Part shown: in pieces, positions 13,101-59,148 of the stretch
Layout of the letters: each line of letters starts with the position of its first letter
How positions within the stretch are numbered: position 1 is the stretch's first letter
Source of the DNA: Octopus sinensis
Lineage: Eukaryota
Length of the DNA stretch: 64,000 nucleotides
Reading direction: 5' to 3'
Assembly: GCF_006345805.1 (NCBI RefSeq)
Contig: NW_021833586.1
Location: forward strand, 1-64,000
Translations under genes and position numbers: made by a program
Notes under the pieces: model-generated
Told to the model about the DNA's origin: nothing
Seen by the model: only the letters and a program-made list of their open reading frames with translations
The model's database searches: none

Positions 13101-14224
13101 CAACCCTCTTGATCTTTGTCGGCACTCTCTTTGATCTTGTCGGCACTCCTCTTTGATCTTTGTCGGCACCCCTCTTTGATCTTTTTCGGCACCCTTTGAT
13201 CTTTGTCGGCACTCCTCTTTGATCTTTGTCGGCACTCCTCTTTGATCTTTTTCGGCACCCTCTTTGATCTTTTTCGGCACTCCTCTTTGATCTTTTTCGG
13301 ACTCCTCTTTGATCTTTGTCGGCAACATCCTTGATCTTGTCGGCACCCTCTTTGATCTTGTCGGCACTCCTCTTTGATCTTTGTCGCACTCTCTTTGATC
13401 TTTGTCGGCACTCCTCTTTGATCTTTTTCGGCACCCTCTTTGATCTTTGTCGCACTCCTCTTTGATCTTTGTCGGCACTCCTCTTGATCTTTTCGGCACC
13501 CTCTTTGATCTTTGTCGGCACTCCTCTTTGATCTTTGTCGGCACCCCTCTTTGATCTTTTTCGGCACCCCTCTTTGATCTTTTTCGGCACCCTACTGATC
13601 TTTTTTCGCACTCCTCTTTGATCTTTGTCGGCAATCCTCTTTGATCTTTGTCGGCATCCTATTTGATCTTTGTCGGCATCCTTTGATCTTTTTCGGCACT
13701 CCTCTTTGATCTTTGTCGGCACTCCTCTTGATCTTTGTCGGCACCATCTTTGATCTTTGTCGGCCTCCTCTTTGATCTTTTCGGCACCCTCTTTGATCTT
13801 TGTCGGCACCTCTTTGATCTTTGTCGGCACTCCTCTTTGATCTTTGTCGGCACTCCTCTTTGATCTTTGTCGGCACTCTCTTGATCTTTGTCGGCACCCT
13901 CTTTGAACTTCTTGTCGGCACTCCTCTTTGATCTTTTTCGGTACCCCTCTTTGATCTTGTCGGACACCTCTTTGATCTTTTTCGGCACCCTCTTTGATCT
14001 TGGTCGGCACTCCTTGAAATACAGGTACAACAGAAACAGGAAGTAAGTGAGGAGAGAGTTGTGGTGAAACAGTACAGCAGGGACCCACCACCCTGCCGGA
14101 GCATCGTGGAGCTTTAGGTGTTTTCGCTCAAAAAAAACACTCACAACGCCCGGTCTGGGAATCGAAACCGCGATCCTACGACCGCGAGTCCGCTGCCCTA
14201 ACCATTGGGCCATTGCGCCTCCAC
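10190..14224 (-). mobile_element. tRNA-derived SINE family C split by a 3.7-kb minisatellite
   Basis: 10190-10272 and 14014-14224 align with the two halves of the intact copy at 58761-59148. Both ends are flanked by (CTA)n-CTCAGGTTTT(T)A.CATAT (about 10136-10189 and 14225-14275). Confidence 0.85.
10272..14013. repeat. 23-bp minisatellite array, about 160-170 units
   Basis: Unit CCTCTTTGATCTTTGTCGGCACT with recurrent variants (TTTTT/TTTGT, CACC, GGTACC). The right-hand third is richer in indels. Confidence 0.97.
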
Positions 14225-16927: not shown

Positions 16928-17105
16928 ATGTTCGGGAAGAGCTGCTTTAGGTTGGATCCACCACCTGCCATTTGGTTACCTACGTTACAAGAAAAACATT
17001 ATGAAGATGATGATGATGATATAAGGGAGAACGAGGACTTCAAGAAAACTAAACACCAAGGTGATACCATTTTTCCTTGGATGCAGAAACGTCACTCTCT
17101 AATAG
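16928..17105 (+). CDS. Hox gene exon 1 (hexapeptide exon); the start codon is provisional
   Basis: [60 protein letters not shown]. It contains the IFPWM hexapeptide. Donor AG|GTATGT at 17105/17106 is phase 1, matching the acceptor at 25560. The frame is open further 5' (to 16844) into a microsatellite, so the true start or an upstream exon is unresolved. Confidence 0.8.
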
Positions 17106-17140
17106 GTATGTACTCTACATATTACATATAAACCTTTATT

Positions 17141-17182
<42 letters not shown>

Positions 17183-17222
17183 CTCAATCTATCTATCTAT
17201 CTACCTTTCTATCTACCTTTCA

Positions 17223-17452
17223 GCGGCGAGCTGGCAGAATCGTTAGCACGCCGGGCGAAATGCGTAGCCGTATTTCGTCTGCCGTTACGTTCTGGGTTCA
17301 AATTACGCTGAGGTCGACTTTGCCTTTCATCCTTTCGGGGTCGATAAATTAAGTACCAGTTACGCACTGGGGTCGATATAATCGACTTAATCCGTTCGTC
17401 TGTCCTTATTTGTCCCCTCTGTGTTTAGCCCCTTGTGGGTAGTAAAGAAATA
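17223..17452 (+). mobile_element. Full-length family A SINE
   Basis: GGCGAGCTGGCAGAATCGTTAGC head, GGTTCAAAT B-box-like motif, Nin/Deu-like core, tail ending GGGTAGTAAAGAAATA. Confidence 0.9.
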
Positions 17453-17511
17453 TCTACCTTTCTAACTATCATTCTATTTCTCTCTCCCTCTTATTCACTC
17501 TCTCCCTTTGA

Positions 17512-17545
<34 letters not shown>

Positions 17546-17560
17546 TATATATATAATATA

Positions 17561-17592
<32 letters not shown>

Positions 17593-17668
17593 TATATGTG
17601 TATGTATATATAGAGAGAGACAGAGAGAGAGGGAAAGAGAGATAAATCATAATATCTATGTATGTATG

Positions 17669-17699
<31 letters not shown>

Positions 17700-18034
17700 C
17701 TACATATATATATATCTATATATATATGTATAAGTATATGTATGTATATATGTATGTATGCATGTATGTTTGTATGTATACACACATTCATATATGGGCA
17801 CATACAAACATAGATACGCATACATATATTGATATGTAAAAGTAGAAATACGGACGCATGCACACACATACACACACACTCACTCACATATGTGTATGTC
17901 TGGATATATTCCATATGTACATATACATACATATACGTATAATACACTGAAACATATATTTAATATAATTCTGTTCGTGTGTAAACTTGTGTATGTGATA
18001 TACGTATGTATGTATGTATATATATATACATATG

Positions 18035-18074
<40 letters not shown>

Positions 18075-18151
18075 TAATTTACATATATATTTACATATAT
18101 ATATAAGATAGATAGATGTATATATATATATATAATATATACGTATGTATA

Positions 18152-18186
<35 letters not shown>

Positions 18187-18659
18187 ATATTACGTATGTA
18201 TATAAACATAGCTATTTAAAAATTGATATACATATCTAAATATATATATAGATGCATATGGACATACAAGCATACACACACGACACACACACATATAATA
18301 CATATATACATTATATAATGTTTGTATATATATGTATATATACGTTTATATTTTATAAGTTTGTTTGTGTGTGTGGGGGTAAATTGTGTGTGTGCGCATG
18401 CGTGTGTGTGTCGGTGTTTGTGTTCATGTGCATACATAAATACTTACTCTCACACGTACATATTTCCTGCACTCTATTAGAAATTTGCAAAGCAATCTGC
18501 TAAAATACGTCTGAGACAGTACATTTGGTTCGCGGAGTTGAGCATGGAAGCTCATCTACCTGCAGTGGCTAAAGTCATGAGCAGTCATAGATGATGCTGA
18601 TGTTGACGGTGACGACGACGACGATAATAAAAAAGATGAATGTTTCCTCCTCTAGCAAT

Positions 18660-18828
18660 GCCACGCTCCTAAGGGCCGGTTTCCCGGTTTCAGTGGCGTA
18701 GAAATTTTCCACCTGGACAGAACGCCGGTCCGTCCCAGGATTACTCATCGCCCTGTCCGGGAATCGAAACCACAATCTTACTATCATAAGTCCAGGAACT
18801 TAACGACTAAGCCACGCGCCTCCACATA
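18660..18828 (-). mobile_element. tRNA-derived SINE head related to family C
   Basis: Reverse complement GTGGAGGCGCGTGGCTTAGTCGTTAAG...GGTTTCGATTCCCGGACAGGGCG. Related degenerate copies at ~21540-21850 - and ~49440-49700 +. Confidence 0.65.
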
Positions 18829-19698
18829 GTCCCCCATGTTCTTAATCGTCAACAGGTACCATTCCACTGTTCCGAAGCATGTTGTCCACATAGGTTAGAC
18901 GTTTTCTTCCCCAGTTGACACGCAGGTTCTGGATGCCTGACCCAATGACCAGCAATTCTCGTTCTTCTCCGCTAAATCTTCCCAGTCACACTGGATATGT
19001 CTTGATAAAGCTGCTCGTTGGTTAAATGAGCTGTCCATATAACATTCAGAGCCAACACCTTAACCACTAAGCCACACACCCCACAATGGGGATTATATAT
19101 ATATATATATTGAAATATAGAAAGAAAATCGCAGATTTTGCTGAGGAGTGCAAAACTTTGAGCTGAGCTTGGAGTGTACTTGATTACAGAATTTCTCTAA
19201 ATTCACTTCATGTAGCAGAATACATAAAATACATCAAGTAAATGGATTTTTGAATATTGGGATAGACCTGGTAACTACATTGTTTCTGGCTGCTTTGTCT
19301 TAGCCAAGATGATAGTGTTAGGAGCTTTCATAGCCTTAAATTAGTTTAACGATATATAATACCATCAGAAACTAGAAAGTATAAGATTATAATAGGAAAG
19401 AGCTTAGAGAATAACAATGTAACCATACTTTGCGATATACCAATGTGCACAGACAAGGGAATCATTACTGATCGGTAAAGTATTGCCTGATCGACCCGGT
19501 GCTGCTATCAAAGGTCTTCTGAAATGGTAGTGTCTCCTAATGGATGTCTCAGTCCAAACTGATGACAATGAATTTCGCAAATGATTGGCAAAATTAAAGA
19601 AAAAGAAAAACCTGGAAATAGAGATAAACCGGATATGCGAACTGGAAAGAGAAACAATATCTACGACAACTATTGTCTTGGAAAGGATAATAATAATA

Positions 19699-19837
19699 TT
19701 AGGTTGTCCCAAAAGTTCGTAAACACTTGCGAAAATTGAATTTTTACTCGCCAAGTACTAACAAAAACAACAAAAATTATTCCTCAAAATAAAGACCATT
19801 ATTTTCCAAGACTTTCTACGAACTTTTGGGACAACCT

Positions 19838-19839
<2 letters not shown>
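19699..19839. mobile_element. Mariner-derived MITE
   Basis: Terminal inverted repeats AGGTTGTCCCAAAAGTTCGTA (19701-19721) and TACGAACTTTTGGGACAACCT (19817-19837). They resemble mariner TTAGGTTG..CAAAAGT ends and sit in a TA context. Confidence 0.75.
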
Positions 19840-19885
<46 letters not shown>

Positions 19886-20860
19886 CATGTACACAGATAT
19901 ATAACGCAAACTATACGAAATTATAAATATGCACAACCGCGCACCAACCCACATGCTTATTTAGGTTTGGCGGCCTACGCACACAATCAATAAAATAATA
20001 TTTACTGATTTCTTATAGAGGGGAACTAAGATTTACAGCCATCTCATATTTGCTTCTCTAGGTTTGTAGCACTTAAGAGAACTTAGGAGCGCATAATGCG
20101 TCTGCTAATTCATGAATAGCGCTCTGAACTGGCTCTGGTATTCCAACATCGTGTTGCCTAAAGTGAGAATGTTTGATCCAAAACAAACTTCAGTGAAAGG
20201 CCTTTACAGGTTCGAATACGTGTCAAACATATTTGAAATGGCAGAAACTAAAAATGGCCAATTTTCAAAGCAATTCACATTGCTTGTGACCTTTTCTGTA
20301 AGAAAGATATGTTCGTATGCGAAATTTAATGTAATTCGGTGCAAAACACTGGCCTGCATTTTCAAACATCCATTTTTTAAAATAATATATTAAGAAGAAA
20401 AACAATAAATTAAACATTTTGCAAAAAAAGCAACTAGGAATTGACGTTTGCAATTAAATTGATTTATAGAAATATAAAGACAAACAACCAGAATTTTATA
20501 AAGTTCAAAGTATTTTAGTTTTAATTATTTCATTAACGGATTTAAAGATAAACAAATAACCTAGAAAACGGCGTAAATCAAAGAGAAGGAAATTAGATTC
20601 TAAATCCAGGAAGAAGAGAGATTAAGATTTTTATTTATCCCCATTTGAATAGTTTAAATTTCAGAACTGATTTTTTTTACTGTTTTTTTTTGTACTGTGC
20701 ACTTTTTATTTTATTTATTTAGTCCTTTTTTTTTCATACAAAAAATATTTCTATTAATCAGCAATACTTAAAAATCTGGTGTAAAGTATCTTAGAGGAGC
20801 AATAGTTTCAAATATCTATGTTCAGAGTTCAAACCATCCTAGGGACAATATATATATATA

Positions 20861-21050
20861 TCTTATATAAAATCCGTTCTGTCTGTCTGTGTGTGGCTTC
20901 TAGGATCTCGGGCATCCTCCATCCGATTGCGCTCAAATTTGATATGTAGACACCGACGGTATCAGGACGTGTATAAGTCTTGAAAACATTTACAAAAATC
21001 GATTCCAGGTGAGAATGCGATCGATAAAGCCGTGGGAAATCGTTTTTATT
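20861..21050 (+). mobile_element. Probable non-autonomous Helitron 5' end fragment
   Basis: A|TCTTATATAAAA followed by (CTGT)n and CCGATT..AAATTTG, a common invertebrate Helitron 5' pattern. No 3' CTRR or hairpin was identified. Confidence 0.45.
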
Positions 21051-21250
21051 TGGAATAAAAATAAGTCTATCTTTATTTCTTCTTTTGCTGGTGTCTCAAA
21101 TTTAGGTTAAATCAGAGTTTCTCAAAGGGGAGACCTATGGGAGGGTCGGGCAAGTTGTTTTGAGAAAATTTGGTTTAAATGTTTGACAACTCAGCACAGT
21201 CCATTGGACGAGGGGAGGGCGTTTTGCTCGTATATATATATTCATATACA

Positions 21251-21281
<31 letters not shown>

Positions 21282-22457
21282 GCGCGCGTGTGTGTGTGTG
21301 TGTGTGTGTGTGTGATAAGAAGCTTGCTTGGCATTTGGGCTAGTGTCTTCTACTCTAGCTTCGGCCGACTAAAGCCTTGTATATGAGTAAACACAAGAGT
21401 ACTCGGAAATTTGCATTAGCTTCGGTTGAATTTTATTTAATGCATTCATAAACGATTACTTCATAATGCACAGTACATCATCATATGGTAAAACTTTTTC
21501 ACAGATAAAATTTTAGCATCGCCCCTTCGGTCACGACACAGACCATGGGATTGCACCTAGAAAGTTACCCTCCCAGGCACAAGTCCCAGCAAAGTTGTTT
21601 TACGGAAGACCAGCCGTCGCTCATGTATACCGGCCTCCCCTCTCCACGCCACCAGTGTTATCGAAGGGAAAGGCAAAGGCCGATACAGTTTGGCACCTGT
21701 GACGTCGCAATTCATTTCTACAGATGAGTGAACAACGTGAGCAACGTGAAATAAAGTGTCTTGCTCAAGAACACAACTCACAACCCGGTACTGGATTCGA
21801 GCTCACAACCTCACGATCGTAAGCTCGACGCTCTAACCACAGAGCCATGTTGTTCCATGACAATACCTATAATATTATTCCCTCAAACTCTTGAGGCTAG
21901 CGAGCTGAAAGAATCGTTAGAGTGATGGAAGAAGGCGGCGAACTGGCGAAATATTTAGAGCGTCGGAAAAACATGCCTTGTCATTTGAATTATTCAGTAC
22001 ATTCCGTGTTCAAAACCCGTCACAATTATCTATACCTTTCATCCTTTACGGGTCGATAAAATAATCTGCCAGTGAAGTAGTGCAGTCGATGGTATCAACT
22101 TATCCTCTCCCGTCAAAATTACTGAAACTACCTACTGCAGTGATTCTCAACTCCCTCCTTTTTTTTTACCTTTGGATCCCTTTGACTGCTATTTTACTCG
22201 ACTGGATCTCCATCGCCATGAAGTGTTTAAAAAGTCTTATATTTTTATAAATAAGTATTATTAGGAAATGCAGTTAGAAAATTGTTAAGATATCTTATAC
22301 ATTATAAAAGTAAAATTAATTAATTGCACATAGGCGTAGGAGTAGCTGTGTGGTAAGTAGCTTGCTAACCAAGCACATGGTTCCGGGATCAGTCCCACTG
22401 CGCGGCATCTTGGGCAAGTGTCTTCTGCTATAGCTCCGGGTCGACCAAAGCCTGTCG

Positions 22458-22498
<41 letters not shown>

Positions 22499-23009
22499 GT
22501 GTGTGTGTTTTTGAGTCTGTGTTTGTCCCCCTAGCATTGCTTGACAACCGATGCTGGTGTGTTTACGTCCCCGTCACTTTGCGGTTCGGCAAAAGAGACC
22601 AATAGAATAAGTACTGGGCTTACAAAAAATAAGTCCCGGGGTCGATTTGCTCGACTAAAGGCGGTGCTCCAGTATGGCCGCAGTCAAATGATTGAAACAA
22701 GTAAAAGAGTAAAGAGAGAGTATATCATCAGGACACATAGGATCCCGGTTGAGGACTACTGGAATAAGGTCTACGTACGTAGCGCTTTAAGCAAACATTA
22801 TCTTAACAATTAAATGAAATCAAAGTCAGAGACGCAAATTGTCACAAATCAAACATTTAATTTATGTATACTAGATTGTTCAATGCCAGTAATAATATTT
22901 ATTAATTATGCACATACCTTCATAGAAGTCTGAGTTGCGTTGTCAAAATGTCGAAAGACAGAAAGCACACACACAATAACCAATAATTATATGTATATAT
23001 ATATTATAT

Positions 23010-23044
<35 letters not shown>

Positions 23045-23055
<11 letters not shown>

Positions 23056-23145
23056 AGGGATGACCATTAAGTGGACATCCATTATGCTAGAATCTACCTC
23101 TAGCATAATGGATGTCCACTTAGTGGTCATCCCCCTTATATGTAT
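23045..23145. repeat. Near-perfect hairpin (about 47-bp stem, 7-nt loop) in the Hox intron
   Basis: ATACATATAAGAGGGATGACCATTAAGTGGACATCCATTATGCTAGA-ATCTACC-TCTAGCATAATGGATGTCCACTTAGTGGTCATCCCCCTTATATGTAT. Confidence 0.9.
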
Positions 23146-23271
23146 GTAATATACTTTTTTCTGAATCTTCAGATTTTTCAATATGCTAGGCCACTGGTTT
23201 TAAATTGATATTAATCAAATAAATATTTAATTTTTCACCCTTATTATTTAAATTATATATATATATATAGA

Positions 23272-23331
<60 letters not shown>

Positions 23332-23345
23332 CATATATATATAAT

Positions 23346-23390
<45 letters not shown>

Positions 23391-24001
23391 ATATACATAT
23401 ATATATATATATTATATAATAATTCTGATGCACACTCTATACGATCTTTTACTCTTTTCGTTTTCTCTCTCTTTTTCTCCCTCTTATTCTTTTAACTCCT
23501 CTTCTTCACTATTCTCTCCTATTATTCTGTCACACTCTCTCCCTCACTCCTCCTCCCTTGCTTACGTGACTCCCACATGACCATCGGCCATCTTTCTTTC
23601 TCTCTCCTCGTTGTAGCTGGAACAAGGAAGACGTTTATCTCCTGCCCTAACATGATTTACGCGTTTGCCACCACAACCTTGTTTAGGCTTAGCAGCTCTT
23701 CCTGTTTGTTTTCATTAACCTGTTTGTGTTACCTATTTTGGCCCTCCGCAAAATCCCAAATTTTATTTAATTTGCTTTGCGGGAGCAACTGTTTTATCGA
23801 AAGCGTATGATTGTTGTTAAATGCTCGAAATATACGAGACTTGAAAAACAGCCACAACTGATGAAGGGTCGTTCTTTATGTTGTTTGTTTTGTTTTCCAT
23901 TTGTGTCTTTCGTTGATCGAAAGAACAGTTCATGTCCCATGTACTCGTGATCCGTACTGTTTTGTTGTACACGTTGTTTCAATACGTTCTGTGCCCACAT
24001 A

Positions 24002-24046
<45 letters not shown>

Positions 24047-24809
24047 TAATATATATATATATGTACGTATAGATATATGTATATATACATATGTATATAT
24101 GCAAATATATATTATCTATATTATATATATATATATTGCTCCAGCATGGCCGCAGTCAATATGACTGAAACAAGTAAAAAAAAAAGATATATATATATAT
24201 ATGATAGGCTTCTTTCAGTTTTCATCTACCAAATCCACTCACAAGGCTTTGATCGGCCTGAGGCTATAGTAGAAGACACTTGCCCAACGTGCCACGCGGT
24301 GGGATTGAACCCGGAACCATGTGGTTGGTGAACAAGCTACTTACCACACAGCCACGTATATATATACATATATATATGAGTACTTGTACGTGTGTGCGCG
24401 CGTGTGTGTGTGTGTATGCATATATGTATACATATATGCGTATATATGTGCACATATATATGTGACTCTATGAGTATGCGTGTGTGTGTATGTGTGTGTG
24501 TGTGTGTGTGCTCTTGTTTAAAAATGAAGCGTATTATATAATGTGGGATGCATATACAATGACACTTTATATGCGACACCCTAGATATAAACTGACTTTA
24601 ACAGTTTTTTTCCCCTTTTATCCATGTTCTGTAGACGTTTACACGTGTTGTTGGAACGTATGAGACTCTGAAATCTTTCATACTGAAGTTGGCACATTTA
24701 ATTCAGAACCATATATATTTCACAAATCCCATATGGAATCAGTTCTTGTTTTTGAGAATAAAACCTCTCTTTCGACTCCATTCCCTTCCGTCGCTCATAT
24801 GTAGTTATT

Positions 24810-24996
24810 AGTGCTGTTGTTGTTGTTGCTGTTGTTGTTGTTGTTGTTTTGTTGTTTTGTTGTTGTCGTTATTGTCGTTGTTGTTGTTGTTGTTGTTGTT
24901 GTTGTTATTCTTTATGTCCTATATTTTTTCTGAAATGTGTAAATCATAGACACACCCAATAATAATAACAATAATAATAATAATAATAATAATAAC

Positions 24997-25043
<47 letters not shown>

Positions 25044-25191
25044 TAGCAGCAGCAACAACAACAACAAAACAACAACAATAATAATAATAATAATAATAAT
25101 AGTATAATAATAATATAATAATATAATAATAATGATAGCAGCAGCAACAACAACAACAACAACAACAACAATAATAATAATAATAATAATA

Positions 25192-25227
<36 letters not shown>

Positions 25228-25310
25228 TAATAATAATTATTATATTATATTATTATTATTATTATTGTTATTGTTATTACCTCTTCTAAATAATAATAAT
25301 AATAATAATA

Positions 25311-25353
<43 letters not shown>

Positions 25354-25395
25354 TATTATTATTATTATTATTATTATTACCTCTTCTACTATTAT
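24810..25395. repeat. Compound (GTT)n/(AAT)n/(AAC)n microsatellite
   Basis: Directly visible, ending about 170 bp upstream of the Hox exon 2 acceptor. Confidence 0.95.
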
Positions 25396-25560
25396 AATTC
25401 TTTATAAATTTGGAACAAGGTCACGATTTTTAAGGGAAGGTGTAAGTCGATTACATTAACATCATTATTCAACATAAGTTTAATGATAACAATAACCAGA
25501 TTAATAAAAAATAATAATTTCTATGATTTTCTATGAATATTCTCTTATGGTTTTTCGCAG

Positions 25561-26117
25561 GACATGGTAAAAATGTTGAAGAGTCGAAAAGAAATCGGAC
25601 AACCTATAGCCAGCACCAAATTCTGGAATTGGAGAAAGAATTTCTCTTCGATAAATATCTTAACAAAAGAAGAAGAGTTGAAATTGCCGATTCTTTAAAT
25701 CTGAGAGAAAGACAAATCAAAATTTGGTTCCAAAATCGACGTATGAAGTGGAAAAAGGAACATCAATTCAACTGTAAAAACCGAATGGTTCAGTTGTCCG
25801 ATTGTCAACAACTGTTGAGTTTGAACACCAGTGGCATCCAGGTACCAAAACAGCCTCGGCAGCAGCTACAACTGGAACAACAGAGAATACAACTTCAACA
25901 ACTACTGCAAGAGCAGCAGCAGCAACAATATCAACAGCTTCAGCACCATGGTCCATATCATGAACAGCAACAGGACCACCGGCAACCGGAGCAGAGCGGC
26001 CCCCATCGACACCAGAAAGAAGATAAGCAACAACCTACGAACCATCAACAACATCGACAGTATCATCATTATTTTCAACATCTACAGCAAGTGGAGGCGC
26101 AATGGCCCAGTGGTTAG
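25561..26117 (+). CDS. Hox gene exon 2: divergent Antp-class homeodomain (Hox4/Dfd or Hox5/Scr) with a Q/H-rich tail
   Basis: Acceptor TTTTTCGCAG|GA at 25560/25561. Homeodomain 25584-25763: [60 protein letters not shown]. The spliced product from ATG 16928 is 244 aa. The last 8 aa and the TAG come from a SINE. Confidence 0.92.
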
Positions 26118-26473
26118 GGCAGCGGACTCACGGTCGGAGGATCGCGGTTTCGATTCCAAGACCGGGCGTTTGTGTGTGTTTATTGAGCGAAAATACCTAA
26201 AGCTCCACGATCTCCGGCAGGGGGTGGTGGCGACCCCTGTTGAACTCTTTCGCTCCAACTTTCTCTCACTCTTTCTTCCTGTTTCTTGTCCCCGATTTCC
26301 TACGCAACCGCTGAGCCTGGATGCGCATTCATCCATCCGTCGATGCTCTCGGTGTCGGGCGTTGACCTGCTTTCTCTTCTGCGGGTCTTACGAATAGCAA
26401 AGTACCACGTTTCGGACTTCTCCCACTACAGACGGGACGAAGACCGCTTCACTCAACAAACAAACAAAACAAG
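26091..26473 (+). mobile_element. Family C-headed SINE inserted in the Hox coding exon
   Basis: GTGGAGGCGCAATGGCCCAGTGGTTAGGGCAGCGG...GGTTTCGATTCC head is the same as the 14224 and 59148 copies. The 3' half differs and ends in a (CAAA)n tail. Confidence 0.9.
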
Positions 26474-26686
26474 CAAAAGCAGCAACAACAACATCAACAA
26501 CAGGTTCAGCACCATTGTCCATACCATGAACAGCTACAGGACCAACGGCAACAGCAGGAGAGTCGCCCCCATCGACACCAGAAAGAAGATAAACAACAAC
26601 AACCTACGAACCATCAACAAAACCGTCAGAATCATCATTATTATCAACATCGAGAGCAGTTAAATTATCACCAACAACAACACTAA
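26474..26686 (+). other. Orphaned, in-frame-compatible C-terminal coding segment of the Hox gene
   Basis: Reads [70 protein letters not shown]. It is a diverged duplicate of ~25918-26090. Confidence 0.7.
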
Positions 26687-31370: not shown

Positions 31371-32282
31371 CCATGACCACCACCACAACAACAAACATTA
31401 CTACCACTATCACCACTACTATCTCAAACACCACCATCACGAGCACTACTACCATCAATACCATGACCACCACCACAACTACAACCATTACAACCACCGT
31501 CACCACTACCATCTCAAACACCACCACCACCAGCACTATTATCACCACTACCATAACCACCACCAGCACTACTACCATGACCACCACCACCACAACAACA
31601 ACCATTACCACCACTACTATCTCAAACAGCACCAGCACCAGCACTACTACAACCACTACCATGACCACCACCACAACTACAACCATCAGAACTACTATCT
31701 CAAACAGCACCACCACCAGCACTACTACAACCACTACCATGACCACCACCACAACTACAACCATCAGAACTACTATCTCAAACAGCACCACCACAGCACT
31801 TACAACCACTACATGACCACCACCACAACTACAACCATCAGAACTACTATCTCAAACAGCACCACCACCAGCACTACTACAACCCACTACCATGACCACC
31901 ACCCACAACTACAACCATCAGAACTACTATCTCAAACAGCACCACCACCAGCACTACTACAACCACTACCATGACCACCACCACAACTACAACCATCAGA
32001 ACTACTATCTCAAACAGCACCACCACCAGCACTACTACAACCACTACCAAGACCACCACCACAACTACAACCATCAGAACTACTATCTCAAACAGCACCA
32101 CCACCAGCACTACTACAACCACTACCATGACCACCACCACAACTACAACCATCAGAACTACTATCTCAAACAGCACCACCACCAGCACTACTACAACCAC
32201 TACCATGACCACCACCACAACTACAACCATCAGAACTACTATCTCAAACAACGCCACCACCACCACCCACAACAACAACAAA
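31371..32282. repeat. 78-bp ACC/ACT-rich minisatellite, about 11 units
   Basis: Unit ATGACCACCACCACAACTACAACCATCAGAACTACTATCTCAAACAGCACCACCACCAGCACTACTACAACCACTACC. Period 78 confirmed between 31971 and 32049. Confidence 0.9.
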
Positions 32283-32679
32283 AGCCTTCATTGTATTGCA
32301 GCAGGTAAAAGAGAAGGGATGTCAGAAATATCGAAGACCCACAATCCACCCCACCCAAAACCCACCCCACCCCACCCCAGCCCGACCCCAGCACCAGAGA
32401 TTCAGGTTTACGAAAGATCCTGTATTAAAATCTAAAGTGAAAACTCTTCTTCTTCCCGACATGTTGCTGCAATTTCACAATGCCTCTGCCATACTCACGC
32501 GCAGAACTCCTGGTTCCTAATTCTAGAGAAAATCGGTCGAATTAAATATATTTTGTTTTTGTTGTTGTTGTTGTTGTTGTCCAGCCCCCAAGAAAGCCTA
32601 ATCGAAGACATCCAGTCGTGACCAACCAACCTTTTATTCCGTGATCTTTATATAAAAATAACAGCCAAAAGAAGTGTTC

Positions 32680-35600
32680 GTTGGTTGGCTGGTTGGCTGG
32701 TTGGTCGGTTGGTGGGTGGGTCGGCAGAATGGCTGGAATGCCGTCTGTTTGGCTAGTTGGTTGGTTTGTCGGTTGGACGTGGAACGCCTGGTTGGCTGGT
32801 TTGTCATGTGTCGGCTGGTTGGCTGGTTTGTCGGTTGGTTGACTGGTTGGTTGGTCTGTCGGTTGGTTGACTGGTTGGCTGGTTTGTCGGTTGGTTGACT
32901 GGTTGGTTGGTCTGTCGGTTGGTTGCATGGTTGGCTGGTTTGTCGGTTGGTTGACTGGTTGGTTGGTCTGTCGGTTGGTTGAATGGTTGGCTGGTTTGTC
33001 GGTTGGTTGACTGGTTGGCTGGTTTGTCGGTTGGTTGACTGGTTGGTTGGTCTGTCGGTTGGTTGACTGGTTGGTTGGTCTGTCGGTTGGTTGACTGGTT
33101 GGCTGGTTTGTCGGTTGGTTGACTGGTTGGCTGGTTTGTCGGTTGGTTGACTGGTTGGTTGGTCTGTCGGTTGGTTGACTGGTTGGCTGGTTTGTCGGTT
33201 GGTTGCCTGGTTGGTTGGTCTGTCGGTTGGTTGACTGGTTGGCTGGTTTGTCGGTTGGTTGAATGGTTGGCTGGTTTGTCGGTTGGTTGACTGGTTGGCT
33301 GGTTTGTCGGTTGGTTGACTGGTTGGTTGGTCTGTCGGTTGGTTGACTGGTTGGCTGGTTTGTCGGTTGTTGACTGGTTGGTTGGTCTGTCGGTTGGTTG
33401 ACTGGTTGGTTGGTGTCGTCGGTTGGTTGACTGGTTGGCTGGTTTGTCGGTTGGTTGACTGGTTGGTTGGTCTGTCGGTTGGTTGACTGGTTGGCTGGTT
33501 TGTCGGTTGGTTGACTGGTTGGTTGGTCTGTCGGTTGGTTGACTGGTTGGCTGGTTTGTCGGTTGGTTGACTGGTTGGTTGGTCTGTCGGTTGGTTGACT
33601 GGTTGGTTGGTCTGTCGGTTGGTTGACTGGTTGGCTGGTTTGTCGGTTGGTCGTCGGCCGACTGGTTGGCTGGTTTGTCGGTTGGTTGAATGGTTGGTTG
33701 GTTTGTCGGTTGGTTGACTGGTTGGCTGGTTTGTCGGTTGGTTGACTGATTGGTTGGTCTGTCGGTTGGTTGACTGGTTGGCTGGTTTGTCGGTTGGTTG
33801 ACTGGTTGGTTGGTCTGTCGGTTGGTTGACTGGTCTGGTTGGTTGGTCTGTCGGTTGGTTGACTGGTTGGCTGGTTTGTCGGTTGGTTGACTGGTTGGTT
33901 GGTCTGTCGTTGGTTGACTGGTTGGTTGGTCTGTCGGTTGGGTTGACTGGTTGGCTGGTTTGTCGGTTGGTCGTCGGCCGACTGGTTGGCTGGTTTGTCG
34001 GTTGGTTGAATGGTTGGTTGGTTTGTCGGTTGGTTGACTGGTTGGTTGGTCTGTCGGTTGGTTGACTGGTTGGCTGGTTTGTCGGTTGGTTGACTGGTTG
34101 GTTGGTCTGTCGGTTGGTTGACTGGTTGGCTGGTTTGTCGGTTGGTTGACTGGTTGGTTGGTCTGTCGGTTGGTTGACTGGTTGGTTGGTCTGTCGGTTG
34201 GTTGACTGGTTGGCTGGTTTGTCGGTTGGTTGACTGGTTGGTTGGTCTGTCGGTTGGTTGACTGGTTGGTTGGTCTGTCGGTTGGTTGACTGGTTGGCTG
34301 GTTTGTCGGTTGGTTGAATGGTTGGTTGGTTTGTCGGTTGGTTGACTGGTTGGTTGGTCTGTCGGTTGGTTGACTGGTTGGCTGGTTTGTCGGTTGGTTG
34401 ACTGGTTGGTTGGTCTGTCGGTTGGTTGAATGGTTGGCTGGTTTGTCGGTTGGTTGACTGGTTGGCTGGTTTGTCGGTTGGTTGACTGGTTGGTTGGTCT
34501 GTCGGTGTGACTGGTTGGCTGGTTTGTCGGTTGGTTGACTGGTTGGTTGGTCTGTCGGTTGGTTGACTGGTTGCTTGGTCTGTCGGTTGGTTGACTGGTG
34601 GCTGGTTTGTCGGTTGGTCGTCGGCCGACTGGTTGGCTGGTTTGTCGGTTGGTTGAATGGTTGGTTGGTTTGTCGGTTGGTTGACTGGTTGGCTGGTTTG
34701 TCGGTTGTTTGGTTGACTGGTTGGGTTGGTTGGTCTGTCGGTTGGTTGACTGGTTGGCTGGTTTGTCGGTGGTTGACTGGTTGGTTGGTCTGTCGGTTGG
34801 TTGACTGGTGGCTGGTTTTGTCGGTTGGTTGACTGGTTGGCTGGTTTGTCGGTTGGTCGTCGGCCGACTGGTTGGCTGGTTTGTCGGTTGGTTGACTGGT
34901 TGGTTGGTTTGTCGGTTGGTTGACTGGTTGGCTGGTTTGTCGGTTGGTCGTCGGCCGACTGGTTGGCTGGTTTGTCGGTTGGTTGACTGGTTGGTTGGTT
35001 TGTCGGTTGGTTGACTGGTTGGTTGGTTTGTCGGTTGGTTGACTGGCTGGCTGGTTTGTCGGTTGGTCATCGGCCAACTGGTTGGCTGGTTTGTCGGTTG
35101 GACATATGTCAGCTGGTTGGTCGGTTGAATGGTTGGCTGGTTTGTCGGTTGGTCGTCGGTCGGCTAGTTGGTTGGTTTGTCGGTTGGACGTGGAACGCCT
35201 GGTTGGCTGGTTTGTCGGCTGGTTGGCTGGTTGGCTGGTTTGTCGGTTGGTTGACTGGTTGGTTGGTTTGTCGGTTGGTTGACTGGTTGGCTGGTTTGTC
35301 GGTTGGTTGACTGGTTGGCTGGTTTGTCGGTTGGTCGTCGGCCGACTGGTTGGCTGGTTTGTCGGTTGGTTGACTGGTTGGTTGGTCTGTCGGTTGGTTG
35401 ACTGGTTGGCTGGTTTGTCGGTTGGTTGACTGGTTGGCTGGTTTGTCGGTTGGTTGACTGGTTGGCTGGTTTGTCGGTTGGTTGACTGGTTGGTTGGTCT
35501 GTCGGTTGGTTGACTGGTTGGCTGGTTTGACGGTTGGTTGACTGGTTGGCTGGTTTGTCGGTTGGTCGTCAGCCGACTGGTTGGCTGGTTTGTCGGTTGG

Positions 35601-38600
35601 TTGACTGGTTGGTTGGTTGTCGGTTGTTGGTTGACTGGTTGGCTGGTTTGTCGGTTGGTCGTCGGCCGACGGTTGGCTGTTTGTCGGTTGGTTGACTGGT
35701 TGGTTGGTTTGTCGGTTGGTTGACTGGTTGGTTGGTTTGTCGGTTGGTTGACTGGCTGGCTGGTTTGTCGGTTGGTCATCGGCCAACTGGTTGGCTGGTT
35801 TGTCGGTTGGACATATGTCAGCTGGTTGGTCGGTTGAATGGTTGGCTGGTTTGTCGGTTGGTCGTCGGTCGGCTGGTTGGCTGGTTTGTCGGTTGGTTGA
35901 CTGGGTGGTTGGTTTGTCGGTTGGTTGACTGGCTGGCTGGTTTGTCGGTTGGTCATCGGCCAACTGGTTGGCTGGTTTGTCGGTTGGACATATGTCAGCT
36001 GGTTGGTTGGTTGAATGGTAGGCTGGTTTGTCGGTTGGTCGTCGGTCGGCTGGTTGGCTGGTTTGTCGGTTGGTTGACTGGTTGGTTGGTGGGTCGGTTG
36101 GTTGACTGGTTGGCTGGTTTGTCGGTTGGTTGACTGGTTGGTTGGTTTGTCGGTTGGTTGACTGGTTGGTTGGTTTGTCGGTTGGTTGACTGGCTGGCTG
36201 GTTTGTCGGTTGGTCATCGGCCAACTGGTTGGCTGGTTTGTCGGTTGGACATATGTCAGCTGGTTGGTCGGTTGAATGGTTGGCTGGTTTGTCGGTTGGT
36301 TGACTGGTTGGTTGGTGGGTCGGTTGGTTGACTGGTTGGCTGGTTTGTGGGTTGGTCGTCGGCCGGCTGGTTGGGTGGTTTGTCAGTTGGTTGACTGGTT
36401 GGTTGGTGGGTCGGTTGGTTGACTGGTTGGCTGGTTTGTCGGTTGGTTGACTGGTTGGTTGGTTTGTCGGTTGGTTGACTGGTTGGCTGGTTTGTCGGTT
36501 GGTCATCGGCCAACTGGTTGGCTGGTTTGTCGGTTGGACATATGTCAGCTGGTTGGTTGGTTGAATGGTTGGCTGGTTTGTCGGTTGGTCGTCGGTCGGC
36601 TGGTTGGCTGGTTTGTCGGTTGGTTGACTGGTTGGTTGGTGGGTCGGTTGGTTGACTGGTTGGCTGGTTTGTCGGTTGGTCGTCGGCCAACTGGTTGGCT
36701 GGTTTGTCGGTTGGTTGACTGGTTGGTTGGTTTGTCGGTTGGTTGACTGGTTGGTTGGTTTGTCGGTTGGTTGACTGGTTGGCTGGTTTGTCGGTTGGTC
36801 ATCGGCCAACTGGTTGGCTGGTTTGTCGGTTGGTCGTCGATCAGCTGGCTGGCTGGTTTGTCAGTTGGTTTACTGGTTGGTTAACTGGTTGGCTGGTTTG
36901 TCGGTTGGACATATGTCAGCTGGTTGGTTGGTTTGTCGGGGTTTTTACTGGTTGGTTGGTGGGTCAGTTTGTTGACAGGTTGGCTGGTTTGTCGGTTGGT
37001 CGTCGGTCGGCTGTTGGTTGGCTGGTTTGTCGGTTGGTTTACTGGTTGGTTGGTGGGTCGGTTGGTTTGACTGGTTGGCTGGTTTGTCAGTTGGACATAT
37101 GTCAGCTGGTTGGTTGGTTGTCGGGTTGTTTACTGGTTGGTTGGTGGGTCGGTTGGTTGACTGGTTGGCTGGTTTGTCGGTTGGTCGTCGTGGCGGGCTG
37201 GTTGGCTGGTTTGTCGGTGGTTTACTGGTTGGTTGGTGGGTCGGTTGGTTGACTGGTTGGGGATGTTTGTCGGTTGGACATATGTAAGCTGGTTGGTTAG
37301 TTTGTCGGTTGGTTGACTGGTTGGCTGGTTTGTCGGTTGGTCGTCGGTCGGCTGGTCGGCTGGTTTGTCGGTTAGTTTACTGGTTGGTTGGTGGGTCGGT
37401 TGGTTGGTGTGTCGGGTGGTTGACTGGTTGGTTGGTTTGTCGGTTGGACATATGTCAGCTGGTTGGTTGGGTTGTCGGTTGGTTGACTGGTTGGTTTGTT
37501 GGTCGGTTGGTTGACTGGTTGGCTGGTTTGTCGGTCGGATATTTGTCAGCTGGTTGGTTGGTTTGTCGGTTGGTTGACTGGTCGGCTGGTTTGTCGGTTT
37601 GTCGTCGATCAGCTGGCTGGCTGGTTTGTCAGTTGGTTTACTGGTTGGTTGACTGGTTGGCTGGTTTGTGGGTTGGACATATGTCAGCTGGTTGGTTGGT
37701 TTGTCGGTTGGTTTACTGGTTGGTTGGTGGGTCAGTTTGTTGACAGGTTGGCTGGTTTGTCGGTTGGTCGTCGGTCGGCTGGTTGGCTTGTTTGTCGGTG
37801 GTTTACTGGTTGGTTGGTGGGTCGGTTGGTTGACTGGTTGGCTGGTTTGTCGGTTGGTCGTCGGTCGGCTGGTTGGCTGGTTTGTCGGTTGGTTTACTGG
37901 TTGGTTGGTGGGTCGGTTGGTTGACTGGTTGGCTGGTTTGTCGGTTGGACATATGTAAGCTGGTTGGTTAGTTTGTCAGTTGGTTGACTGGTTGGCTGGT
38001 TTGTCGGTTGGTCGTCGGTCGGCTGGTCGGCTGGTTTGTCGGTTAGTTTACTGGTTGGTTGGTGGGTCGGTTGGTTGTCTGGTTGGCTGGTTTGTCGGGT
38101 TGTTTACTTGTTGGTTGGTCTGTCGGTTGGTTGACTGGTTGGCTGGTTTGTCGGTTGGACATATGTCAGCTGGTTGGTTGGTCTGTCGGTTGGTTGACTG
38201 GTTGGCTGGTTTGTCGGTTGGACATATGTCAGCTGGTTGGTTGGTTTGTCGGTTGGTTTACTGGTTGGTTGGTGGGTCAGTTTGTTGACTGGTTGGCTGG
38301 TTTGTCGGTTGGTCGTCGGTCGGCTGGTTGGCTGGTTTGTCGGTTGGTTTACTGGTTGGTTGGTGGGTCGGTTGGTTGACTGGTTGGCTGGTTTGTCGGT
38401 TGGACATATGTCAGCTGGTTGGTTGGTTTGTCGGTTGGTTTACTGGCTGGTTGGTGGGTCGGTTGGTTGACTGGTTGGCTGGTTTGTCGGTTGGTCGTCG
38501 GTCGGCTGGTTGGCTGGTTTGTCGGTTGGTTGGCTTGTTAGTCGGTTTGTCGTCGGCCGACTGGTTGGCTGGTTTGTCGGTTGGTTTACTGGTTGGTTGG

Positions 38601-47494: not shown

Positions 47495-47670
47495 CGCAAT
47501 GGCCTAGTGGTTAGGGCAGCGGACTCGCGGTCGCAGGATCGCGGTTTCGATTTTCAGACTGGGCGTTGTGTGTGTTTATTGAGCGAAAAGACCTAAAGCT
47601 CTACGAGGCTCCGCAGGGGTGGTGATCCCTGCTGTACTCTTTCACTCTTTCACTACAATGGCGGTGCCCC
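47495..47670 (+). mobile_element. Partial family C SINE
   Basis: GCGCAATGGCCTAGTGGTTAGGGCAGCGGACTCGCGG head. A shorter head fragment lies at 50182-50222. Confidence 0.8.
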
Positions 47671-58760: not shown

Positions 58761-59148
58761 GGATGGAAGCACTCCGTCGGTTACGACGACGAGGGTTCCG
58801 GTTGATCCGAATCAATGGAACAGCCTGCTCGTGAAATTAACGTGTAAGTGGCTGAGCACTCCACAGACACGTGTACCCTTAACGTAGTTCTCGGGGATAT
58901 TCAGCGTGACGCAGAGAGTGACAAGGCCGGCCCTTTGAAATACAGGTACAACGGAAACAGGAAGTAAGAGTGAGAGAAAGTTGTGGTGGAAGAGTACAGC
59001 AGGGATCACCACCATCCCCTGCCGGAGCATCGTGGAGCTTTAGGTGTTTTCGTTCAATAAACACTCACAACGCCCGGTCTGGGAATCGAAACCGCGATCC
59101 TATGACCACGAGTCCGCTGCCCTAACCACTGGGCCATTGCGCCTCCAC
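58761..59148 (-). mobile_element. Intact family C SINE with a target-site duplication
   Basis: TSD TGATGCTGGTAT at 58749-58760 and 59149-59160. A-box-like (TGGCCCAGTGG) and B-box-like (GGTTTCGATTCCC) motifs are present. Confidence 0.92.

What the first reader, a model, noticed from the sequence alone, without database searches (positions are those of the whole stretch)
25584..25790. Strongly divergent central Hox homeodomain with mixed Dfd and Scr signatures
Seen: helix 3 is invariant, but the N-arm and helices 1-2 carry many substitutions at normally conserved Antp-class sites (S9, Q10, L21, D23, N27, K28, V32, D36, R41). Dfd-like traits are KRNR, HQILE and post-homeodomain EHQFNCKNR, which resembles a decayed EHKLPNTK parapeptide. 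Scr-like traits are K24, N39 and KKEH. From memory and unverified, Hox4/Dfd has often been scored as not found in octopod inventories. A fast-evolving Dfd would then be a missed gene; otherwise this is an unusually divergent Scr or a duplicate.
Basis: partly seen in the sequence, partly recalled or inferred. Interest (0 to 1): 0.7.

Follow-up and report, generated by a model that had tools for sequence, protein, structure and literature searches.

The report
Divergent octopus Hox4-like homeobox gene
This is a real, intact but unusually fast-evolved Hox gene of Octopus sinensis that looks most like Hox4/Deformed, the Hox gene that published inventories say octopuses have lost, although the orthology is not yet proven.

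Summary
Window 25584-25763 (+) encodes a 60-residue homeodomain (Pfam E = 1.5e-22). Helix 3 is invariant, and there are 14 departures from the Hox4 consensus, all in positions 1-41.

It is exon 2 of a two-exon gene. Exon 1 (16928-17105) carries a hexapeptide, IFPWMQK. The window is Octopus sinensis scaffold VCDQ01003319.1, and RefSeq already models the gene as XP_036355485.1, 'Hox-C4a-like'.

The sole-Scr reading is refuted from the literature: a conventional Scr/Hox5 is reported in O. vulgaris and Argonauta. No octopod Scr sequence could be retrieved here.

Evidence favouring Hox4/Dfd is moderate:
- Profile scores give Hox4 117.5 bits against lophotrochozoan Hox5 112.9 bits.
- In neighbour-joining bootstraps Hox5 is the sister group in under 4% of replicates.
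- N4, I13 and K after the hexapeptide's WM are Hox4-type residues.
- The tail N-x-K-x-R-M looks like a remnant of the Hox4 parapeptide.
- The best single-domain hit among 1.84 billion representatives is a Hox4-type protein sharing the otherwise unseen 'KKEHQxN'.

Against it, the diagnostic LPNTK motif is not intact, N39 is Scr-like, and the scaffold is unplaced, so synteny cannot be tested.

The literature says octopods lack Hox4. If this gene is the orthologue, 'loss' becomes 'extreme divergence'. My confidence in Hox4 orthology is about 0.55.

The parts
16928..17105 (+). Exon 1 (coding part). It runs from the ATG through 59 codons plus 1 base: [59 protein letters not shown]. It is very short and lacks the usual Hox4 N-terminal motif (SSFLMN...PKFPP).
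   Evidence: tblastn of P0001 gives 100% identity. Sequence and frame were read. No N-terminal Hox4 or Hox5 motif was found anywhere in the window.
17072..17083 (+). Hexapeptide core FPWM (context [11 protein letters not shown]), the motif through which Hox proteins contact PBC (Exd/Pbx) cofactors.
   Evidence: K at the second residue after WM occurs in 69% of lophotrochozoan Hox4 and 12% of lophotrochozoan Hox5. T at position -2 occurs in 7% and 0%.
17106..25560 (+). Intron of 8,455 nt, phase 1, with GTATGT at the 5' end and TTTTCGCAG at the 3' end. It splits a Gly codon 8 residues before the homeodomain.
   Evidence: The Hox4-type gene in locus L002 (P0005) has the same phase and position.
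25561..25583 (+). Start of exon 2: the linker (G)HGKNVEE before the homeodomain.
25584..25763 (+). Homeodomain, 60 codons. Helix 3 is invariant and there are 14 substitutions in positions 1-41.
25764..25787 (+). Post-homeodomain QFNCKNRM. It is a possible decayed Hox4 parapeptide (KLPNTKTRL), keeping N, K, R and M/L if one residue was deleted. The intact LPNTK and HIAKNM motifs are both absent.
   Evidence: Alignment. The motif definitions come from PMC5103448. Flank profile scores are weak: Hox4 2.3 bits, Hox5 none or -0.8.
25788..26117 (+). Continuation of the open reading frame into a Q/H-rich tail, with the stop codon at 26115-26117. The last roughly 8 codons and the stop lie inside a SINE-like element. 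RefSeq instead removes a 43-nt GT-AG mini-intron (25788-25830) and reads a T/A-rich frame. Which 3' end is real is not settled.
   Evidence: The BLASTP alignment to P0008 runs past the RefSeq donor site to residue 141.
26090..26400 (+). tRNA-like SINE-type repeat, one of 5 copies of its head in the window. It terminates the long ORF. Its boundaries are approximate.
   Evidence: ARAGORN and Rfam find no true tRNA.
26473..26658 (+). Second copy of the Q/H-rich tail segment, 82-84% identical to 25907-26089. It is still open in the same Q-rich frame as I read it from the printed sequence. Its relation to the gene is unknown.
   Evidence: (families D3 and D4).

Best explanation
This is a functional Hox-class transcription factor gene of Octopus sinensis with two exons: a hexapeptide exon, an 8.5-kb intron and a homeodomain exon. 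It is most probably the octopod orthologue of Hox4/Deformed, evolved far faster than the other octopod Hox genes.

How it works, shown: the homeodomain is predicted to fold into the canonical three helices. The residues that contact DNA in solved Hox structures are kept (R3, R5, Y8, Y25, R31, I47, Q50, N51, R53, M54). So are the hydrophobic core and the FPWM motif.

How it works, inferred: it binds TAAT-type sites through helix 3 and the N-terminal arm, probably together with a PBC (Exd/Pbx) partner held by the hexapeptide. The 14 changes lie in the N-terminal arm and helices 1-2, mostly at positions I take to be solvent-exposed. They would mainly alter protein-protein contacts or fine specificity rather than abolish binding.

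The orthology assignment is also inferred. The confidence given (0.55) is for the Hox4 orthology; that it is a real, constrained Hox gene I hold at about 0.85.
For: Gene reality and constraint:
- Pfam E = 1.5e-22.
- The ORF is intact across both exons, with canonical splice sites and matching phase.
- All 14 amino-acid changes lie outside helix 3 (p = 0.002-0.005). Helix 3 shows 10-11 synonymous and 0 non-synonymous codon differences against two related genes.
- AlphaFold2 gives pLDDT 94-97 over the domain. Foldseek fits it to the Antp homeodomain at 0.6-0.8 A.

Hox4 rather than another group:
- Homeodomain-only profiles, labelled independently by flank motifs, score Hox4 117.5, lophotrochozoan Hox5 112.9, ambulacrarian Hox5 107.3, arthropod/vertebrate Hox5 106.2, Hox6-8 101.1, Hox3 101.0, Hox2 89.3 and Xlox 84.5 bits.
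- In leave-one-out tests, true Hox4 sequences score +1.9 to +15.1 bits and true Hox5 -13.5 to -10.0. This gene scores +4.6.
- With Hox4 subsampled to 19 sequences the margin is still +3.3 to +3.9 bits.
- In neighbour-joining bootstraps lophotrochozoan Hox5 is the sister group in only 1.5-3.6% of replicates. Hox4 is the commonest pure sister group at 22-61%.
- I13 occurs in 62% of Hox4 and 0% of Hox5. N4 occurs in 17% and 0%.
- K at the second residue after WM occurs in 69% of Hox4 and 12% of Hox5.
- The best-scoring named hits after the self-match and three multi-homeodomain fusion models, in a 5.8-billion-protein search, are mostly molluscan Hox4.
- In an exhaustive search of 1.84 billion representatives the best single-domain hit is P0008. 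It has a canonical Hox4 homeodomain, a 15-residue linker of the same length with the shared pattern xKxHSxxGxG, and the tail 'KKEHQxN'. That tail appears nowhere else among about 250 proteins and 80 metagenome loci.

By elimination:
- Published octopod sets contain Hox1, Hox3, Scr, Lox5, Antp, Lox4, Lox2, Post2 and Post1, and lack only Hox2 and Hox4.
- Hox2 fits this gene badly, at 89.3 bits.
Against: - The diagnostic Hox4 parapeptide LPNTK is not intact.
- N39 is invariant in lophotrochozoan Scr and found in 2% of Hox4. K24 is commoner in Hox5.
- A 12-residue hexapeptide profile slightly favoured Hox5, by -4.7 bits. That Hox4 set was a mixed-phylum one.
- Identity to the Hox4 and Hox5 consensus sequences is equal, 46 of 60.
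- The homeodomain-only tree is unresolved. Its strongest signal, a sister relation to the divergent sacoglossan Hox4 in 50% of replicates, may be long-branch attraction.
- No cephalopod Hox4 or Scr sequence could be retrieved for direct comparison.
- The organism behind P0005 and P0008 is unknown.
- The scaffold is unplaced, so position relative to Hox3 and Scr is untested.
- No expression data were available.
Confidence: 0.55

Rival explanations
1. It is a lineage-specific paralogue: a duplicate of Scr/Hox5 or another central Hox gene that diverged quickly, while the true Hox4 was lost in octopods.
For: - N39 and K24 are Scr-like.
- Identity to the Hox4 and Hox5 consensus sequences is equal.
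- LPNTK is not intact.
- The gene sits on an unplaced scaffold surrounded by repeats.
- T7 is the state found in central-class (Hox6-8 type) genes.
Against: - It has I13, not the T13 that is invariant in Hox5, and N4.
- It lacks the HIAKNM motif and the Q/H at position -2 of the hexapeptide that all Hox5 sequences here carry.
- Profile odds are 3-5 bits against Hox5 and 16 bits against Hox6-8.
- Hox5 is the sister group in under 4% of bootstraps.
- It needs two events, a duplication and a loss, where orthology needs only acceleration.
Confidence: 0.25
2. It is a decaying relic: a Hox4 or other Hox copy released from selection, effectively a young pseudogene whose reading frame happens to be open.
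For: - It has more substitutions at normally conserved sites than any of 63 comparable Hox4 homeodomains.
- The N-terminus is very short and has lost the usual Hox4 motifs.
- The parapeptide is decayed.
- A SINE-like element sits in the 3' coding tail.
- No orthologue or transcript was found in any collection searched.
Against: - The ORF is open across both exons, with canonical splice sites.
- Helix 3 is untouched while 14 changes accumulated elsewhere (p = 0.002-0.005), with only synonymous differences in helix 3.
- The DNA-contact residues, the core residues and FPWM are all kept.
- The predicted fold has high confidence.
Confidence: 0.1
3. It is the octopus Scr/Hox5 itself, unusually divergent, with no other Scr in the genome.
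For: - N39 and K24 are Scr-like.
- Drosophila Scr is the best match among solved structures, but the PDB holds no Dfd/Hox4.
Against: This evidence comes from the literature, not from sequences retrieved here.
- O. vulgaris, the sister species, has a separate Hox5 transcript (OR250460) that clusters with the Euprymna orthologue.
- Argonauta Scr is 100% identical to giant-squid Scr over 79 residues.
- This gene is at most 47 of 60 identical to any Hox5.
Confidence: 0.02
4. It belongs to another ANTP-class family: the ParaHox gene Xlox/Pdx, Hox2 or Hox3.
For: - Pdx1 shares L21, K24, V32 and N39 and also has an FPWM hexapeptide. It ranks third among the PDB matches listed (second among natural proteins), at 86.9 bits.
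Against: - Q44, R29 and H60 are Hox states, not Xlox states.
- Profile scores are Xlox 84.5, Hox2 89.3 and Hox3 101.0 against Hox4 117.5 bits.
- Separate Xlox and Hox3 genes are known in O. vulgaris.
Confidence: 0.02

Closest known systems
Lophotrochozoan Hox4/Deformed, for example Nucula tumidula Hox4 (P0017), Lottia Hox4 (P0023) and Acanthochitona Hox4 (P0098)
   Same: - Two-exon layout with the hexapeptide and homeodomain on separate exons.
- (S)KRNR at the start of the homeodomain, [10 protein letters not shown], and S37.
- K at the second residue after WM and 'HS' after the hexapeptide (the chiton has YPWMRKSHS).
- KKEH at the end of the homeodomain.
- N, K, R and L/M of the parapeptide are retained.
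- Hox4 gives the highest profile score.
   Different: - 14 substitutions from the consensus. Q10, D36 and R41 were seen in no other homeodomain collected.
- N39 instead of C39.
- LPNTK is not intact.
- F replaces Y in the hexapeptide.
- The N-terminal SSFLMN/PKFPP motifs are absent and the N-terminus is only 59 residues.
- There is a Q/H-rich C-terminal tail.
P0008 and P0005: Hox4-type proteins of unidentified organisms (Logan transcripts SRR27666061-87 and SRR24189498; ENA assembly ERZ21867824)
   Same: - P0008 is the best single-domain hit in the exhaustive search, 64% identical over 96 residues spanning hexapeptide, linker, homeodomain and tail.
- K24.
- The tail 'KKEHQxN', seen nowhere else.
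- A 15-residue linker of the same length with the pattern xKxHSxxGxG.
- The same intron position and phase.
- They also lack an intact LPNTK and the N-terminal SSFLMN motif.
   Different: - Their homeodomain is otherwise canonical Hox4.
- P0008 has a long N/Q-rich N-terminus (288 residues in all).
- The organism is unknown, so a cephalopod origin is only a hypothesis.
Sacoglossan sea-slug Hox4 (Elysia marginata and Plakobranchus ocellatus 'Hox-D4', P0012 and P0010)
   Same: - Highest homeodomain identity, 49 of 60.
- They share the rare S9, L21 and V32, plus S37.
- They are also fast-evolving Hox4 genes (8 differences from consensus).
- They are the neighbour-joining sister group in 50% of bootstraps.
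   Different: - They keep the parapeptide (KQPNTK) and C39.
- The resemblance is probably convergence or long-branch attraction between two accelerated Hox4 genes, not close kinship.
Lophotrochozoan Scr/Hox5, for example Acanthochitona Hox5 (P0099) and Patella Hox-B5 (P0113)
   Same: - N39 and K24.
- KKEH, and 46-47 of 60 identity.
   Different: - I13 instead of the invariant T13, and N4 instead of S/T.
- No HIAKNM motif.
- The hexapeptide context is TIFPWMQK, not [QH]IYPWM[RK]R.
- The profile score is 3-5 bits lower.

Membership tests
Homeodomain (Pfam PF00046), ANTP class | 60-residue helix-turn-helix domain with W48, F49, N51 and R53, and the three-helix fold. | tested here: met
   Pfam E = 1.5e-22. 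AlphaFold2 gives pLDDT 94-97 with helices at homeodomain positions 10-22, 28-38 and 42 onward. Foldseek matches Antp at rmsd 0.6-0.8 A.
Hox genes (paralogue groups 1-8) | Hexapeptide ([YF]PWM) upstream of the homeodomain on a separate exon, and helix 3 reading [13 protein letters not shown]. | tested here: met
   FPWM lies at 17072-17083 in exon 1, with a phase-compatible splice to exon 2. Helix 3 is identical to the consensus.
Hox genes | Location in, or descent from, the Hox cluster (linkage with other Hox genes). | not testable with these tools
   The gene lies on an unplaced 78.8-kb scaffold. No other gene is recognisable in the 64-kb window.
Hox4/Deformed (paralogue group 4) | LPNTK parapeptide just after the homeodomain (PMC5103448). 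| tested here: not met
   The sequence is QFNCKNRM. Only N, K, R and M/L line up with (LP)NTKTRL if one residue was deleted. The flank profile scores 2.3 bits.
Hox4/Deformed (paralogue group 4) | Homeodomain closer to group 4 than to any other group. | tested here: met
   Hox4 scores 117.5 bits against 112.9 for the next class. The +4.6 difference falls inside the leave-one-out range for Hox4 and outside that for Hox5. The margin is modest.
Hox4/Deformed (paralogue group 4) | Monophyly with Hox4 in a phylogeny. | tested here: inconclusive
   In homeodomain-only neighbour-joining bootstraps the sister group is Hox4 in 22-61% of replicates, a mixed group in 16-36% and Hox5 in 1.5-3.6%. No cephalopod Hox4 was available.
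Hox4/Deformed (paralogue group 4) | N-terminal SSFLMN...PKFPP motif of lophotrochozoan Hox4. | tested here: not met
   It is absent from exon 1 and from all six frames of the window.
Scr/Hox5 (paralogue group 5) | Molluscan HIAKNM motif after the homeodomain, T13, S7, and the hexapeptide context [QH]IYPWM[RK]R. | tested here: not met
   None of these is present. Only N39 and K24 agree with Hox5.
Xlox/Pdx (ParaHox) | H44 (ERHIKIW), P29 (SRPRR) and KKEE at the end of the homeodomain. | tested here: not met
   This gene has Q44, R29 and KKEH. The Xlox profile scores 84.5 bits.

The most novel reading that the evidence does not exclude
Octopods did not lose Hox4. The gene survives as a highly derived locus with a rewritten N-terminus, a decayed parapeptide and a remodelled helix 1-2 surface. 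The 'KKEHQxN' proteins P0005 and P0008 would then be the less derived decapodiform state, bridging canonical Hox4 and the octopus gene. That would point to a changed partner or target repertoire specific to the octopod body plan.
Probability: 0.45. Interest if true: 0.65.

Novelty: new member of a known kind. Interest (0 to 1): 0.5.

Why it matters
Cephalopod genome papers treat the absence of Hox4 in octopods as a lineage feature. One paper links the loss of anterior Hox genes to loss of the external shell.

If this gene is the Hox4 orthologue, that story changes from gene loss to extreme divergence of one Hox gene, while its neighbours stay almost unchanged. Argonauta Scr is 100% and Hox3 98% identical to the giant-squid genes.

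It would also add a tenth Hox gene to be included in octopus expression studies. The 2023 O. vulgaris study could not examine Hox4 because it was not found or could not be amplified.

If the gene is instead a paralogue or a relic, it is a minor annotation note.

Tried and rejected
- Retrieving cephalopod Hox4 and Scr proteins. Searches with the Hox4-type P0005 and with chiton Hox5 listed no cephalopod entry in the top 120. The word-index search also missed P0008 when queried with its close relative P0005, so its silence is not evidence of absence.
- Finding sequences in papers or supplements. Only accession numbers are given. Albertin 2015 is not held.
- Identifying the organism of P0005 and P0008. 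I tried run accessions in the literature, cluster names, DNA similarity of flanks and UTRs to the window, and an A-to-G excess among 14 transcripts as a sign of coleoid RNA editing (AG 25 against CT 19, uninformative).
- Finding octopod orthologues for a dN/dS estimate. None turned up in the 5.8-billion-protein set, the 1.84-billion representatives or the JGI metagenomes, where the best match was 74% identical.
- Looking for an upstream exon with the Hox4 N-terminal motif. Only repeat-derived noise was found.
- Looking for neighbouring genes for synteny. The long ORFs in the window are translated minisatellites.
- One label was wrong. A group I first called 'Lox5' (tail NVKSISQL) is ambulacrarian Hox5. 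As a result no lophotrochozoan Lox5, Antp, Lox4 or Lox2 sequences were compared directly.
- A first Biopython neighbour-joining run timed out. A first flank-profile run returned stale scores. Both were redone.

Full report
**What the window is.** The window is identical, coordinate for coordinate, to the first 64 kb of Octopus sinensis scaffold VCDQ01003319.1 (assembly GCA_006345805.1). That scaffold is 78,846 bp long and unplaced. The finding lies in a gene that RefSeq models as XP_036355485.1, 'homeobox protein Hox-C4a-like', 178 residues.

**Checking the observation.** Bases 25584-25763 (+) translate to a 60-residue homeodomain: [60 protein letters not shown]. Pfam Homeodomain scores E = 1.5e-22.

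Q10, D36 and R41 occur in none of them. The domain differs from the consensus of 63 non-arthropod, non-vertebrate Hox4 domains at 14 sites, where the median is 4 and the maximum 12. Positions 42-60 are untouched. 'Strongly divergent with an invariant helix 3' is therefore correct.

**Gene anatomy.**
- Exon 1 (16928-17105) starts at an ATG and encodes 59 residues ending ...[15 protein letters not shown], which includes a hexapeptide.
- A canonical donor (AG|GTATGT) follows. After 8,455 nt comes an acceptor (TTTTCGCAG|). The phase-1 junction rebuilds a Gly codon 8 residues before the homeodomain.
- After the homeodomain the frame stays open for 118 codons, through a Q/H-rich tail, to a stop at 26115-26117.
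- The last codons and the stop lie inside a tRNA-like SINE-type repeat that has five copies of its head in the window.
- RefSeq instead splices out 43 nt (25788-25830) and reads another frame. The alignment to the nearest relative continues past that donor site, so I slightly prefer read-through. The 3' end is unresolved.
- A second copy of the tail segment, 82-84% identical, lies at 26473-26658.
- Nothing else in the window looks like a gene. The long ORFs are translated minisatellites.

**Is it a working gene?**
- The 14 replacements all fall in positions 1-41 (p = 0.002-0.005 if placed at random).
- Against two related genes, helix 3 has 10-11 synonymous and no non-synonymous codon differences.
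- The residues that contact DNA in solved Hox structures are retained (R3, R5, Y8, Y25, R31, I47, Q50, N51, R53, M54). That list rests on established structural knowledge. The hydrophobic core and FPWM are retained too.
- AlphaFold2 predicts the three canonical helices with pLDDT 94-97. The model fits the Antp homeodomain at 0.6-0.8 A.

The protein should therefore still bind TAAT-type sites, probably with a PBC partner. The changes sit in the N-terminal arm and helices 1-2, mostly at positions I take to be solvent-exposed. Binding and function are inferred, not shown. No expression evidence was available.

**Which Hox gene? Not the sole Scr.** This rests on the literature.
- O. vulgaris has separate Hox3, Hox5, Lox4, Lox2, Gsx and Xlox transcripts. 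The paper reports its Hox1, Hox5 and Xlox clustering close to Euprymna orthologues, and its Hox3, Lox4 and Gsx closest to Xipholeptos and Euprymna orthologues.
- Argonauta has nine Hox genes. Its Scr is 100% and its Hox3 98.3% identical to the giant-squid genes.
- I could not retrieve any octopod Scr sequence myself.

**Which Hox gene? Evidence favouring Hox4.**
- I labelled comparison sequences only by their flank motifs (LPNTK-type or HIAKNM-type) and built profiles from the homeodomain alone. Scores were Hox4 117.5, lophotrochozoan Hox5 112.9, ambulacrarian Hox5 107.3, arthropod/vertebrate Hox5 106.2, Hox6-8 101.1, Hox3 101.0, Hox2 89.3 and Xlox 84.5 bits.
- In leave-one-out tests true Hox4 sequences give +1.9 to +15.1 bits (Hox4 minus Hox5) and true Hox5 give -13.5 to -10.0. 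This gene gives +4.6. With equal sample sizes it gives +3.3 to +3.9.
- The region from hexapeptide to 16 residues past the homeodomain gives +4.5 bits.
- The site-by-site picture is mixed. I13 (62% of Hox4, 0% of Hox5) and N4 (17%, 0%) point to Hox4. N39 (2%, 100%) and K24 (21%, 47%) point to Hox5.
- Around the hexapeptide, K at the second residue after WM (69%, 12%) and a non-Q/H residue at -2 point to Hox4.
- After the homeodomain, QF-NCKNRM lines up with KLPNTKTRL at N, K, R and M/L if one residue was deleted. The Hox5 motif HIAKNM needs two gaps.
- Neighbour-joining bootstraps on the homeodomain alone are unresolved, as expected for 60 sites and a long branch. Lophotrochozoan Hox5 is the sister group in only 1.5-3.6% of replicates and Hox4 in 22-61%.
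- The strongest single attraction is to the fast-evolving sacoglossan Hox4, which shares S9, L21 and V32. That may be long-branch attraction.

**The nearest relative.** An exhaustive HMMER scan of 1.84 billion representatives found no second octopod protein. Once multi-homeodomain fusion models are set aside, the best hit is P0008 (122.9 bits).
- P0008 is a 288-residue transcript product from RNA-seq runs SRR27666061-87 and SRR24189498. P0005 is a relative from an ENA assembly.
- Both have a canonical Hox4 homeodomain with K24 but no intact LPNTK.
- They share with the octopus gene the tail 'KKEHQxN', seen in no other of about 250 proteins and 80 metagenome loci.
- They also share a 15-residue linker of equal length with the pattern xKxHSxxGxG and the same intron position and phase.
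- If these come from decapodiform cephalopods, they would be the missing link to canonical Hox4. I could not establish the organism.

**Comparison with the literature.**
- Three papers state that Hox4 was not found in O. bimaculoides, Argonauta or O. vulgaris. [quoted passage not shown]
- The Nautilus genome paper lists only Hox2 as missing in Euprymna, and the giant-squid paper includes Hox4 among the cephalopod homeodomains it compared, so decapodiform squids appear to keep Hox4.
- No paper in the library mentions this gene or 'Hox-C4a' in octopus.
- The gene model is therefore public, but the octopod Hox inventories read here do not include it.

**Verdict.**
- A real, constrained, unusually divergent Hox gene: confidence about 0.85.
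- Hox4/Dfd orthologue: about 0.55.
- Lineage-specific paralogue: about 0.25.
- Decaying relic: about 0.1.
- Sole Scr or another family: 0.02 each.

The defining LPNTK motif is not met and cluster position is untestable here, so I call it a candidate Hox4 rather than filing it as one.

Noticed in passing
window 10270-14014: A 23-bp minisatellite (TCTTTGTCGGCACTCCTCTTTGA, about 166 copies, 90% matches). On the minus strand it produces artefactual ORFs of more than 1,000 codons, 3-7 kb upstream of the Hox gene's first exon.
   Followed up: partly
window 32676-39975: A 7.3-kb G/T-rich array (28-bp unit CTGGTTGGTTGGTTTGTCGGTTGGTTGA, about 237 copies). GC skew reaches +0.57 and AT skew about -0.8. 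It also yields very long spurious ORFs on both strands.
   Followed up: partly
window 31556-32266: A tandem repeat of 78/156-bp units (about 9 and 4.4 copies, 93-95% matches) just upstream of the large G/T-rich array.
   Followed up: no
window 14186-14211 (-), 26104-26129 (+), 47501-47526 (+), 50197-50222 (+), 59110-59135 (-): Five copies of a tRNA-like SINE head (GGCCCAGTGGTTAGGGCAGCGGACTC; none expected by chance). ARAGORN and Rfam call none of them a tRNA. The copy at 26104 supplies the stop codon of the Hox gene's long ORF.
   Followed up: partly
window 25907-26089 and 26473-26658: The Q/H-rich C-terminal tail segment is duplicated (82-84% identity), with the SINE-like element between the copies. 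The second copy is still open in the same Q-rich frame as I read it from the printed sequence, and ends at its own TAA. It could be an ancestral or alternative 3' end.
   Followed up: partly
window 25788-25830: The RefSeq model XP_036355485.1 removes a 43-nt GT-AG 'intron' here and then reads a T/A-rich frame. The intron is very short, and the alignment to the nearest relative continues through it, so the modelled C-terminus is doubtful.
   Followed up: partly
loci L002 (5001-5438) and L003-L016: P0005 and P0008 are Hox4-type genes of unknown organisms. They have a canonical homeodomain but a decayed parapeptide (EHQSNHSK) and no SSFLMN N-terminus. P0008 was assembled in about two dozen RNA-seq runs. 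Identifying the species would settle much of the question.
   Followed up: partly
proteins P0010 and P0012 (Plakobranchus and Elysia 'Hox-D4'): These sacoglossan Hox4 genes are also accelerated (8 differences from consensus). They share S9, L21, V32 and S37 with the octopus gene, which suggests that fast-evolving Hox4 genes repeatedly change the same helix 1-2 positions.
   Followed up: no
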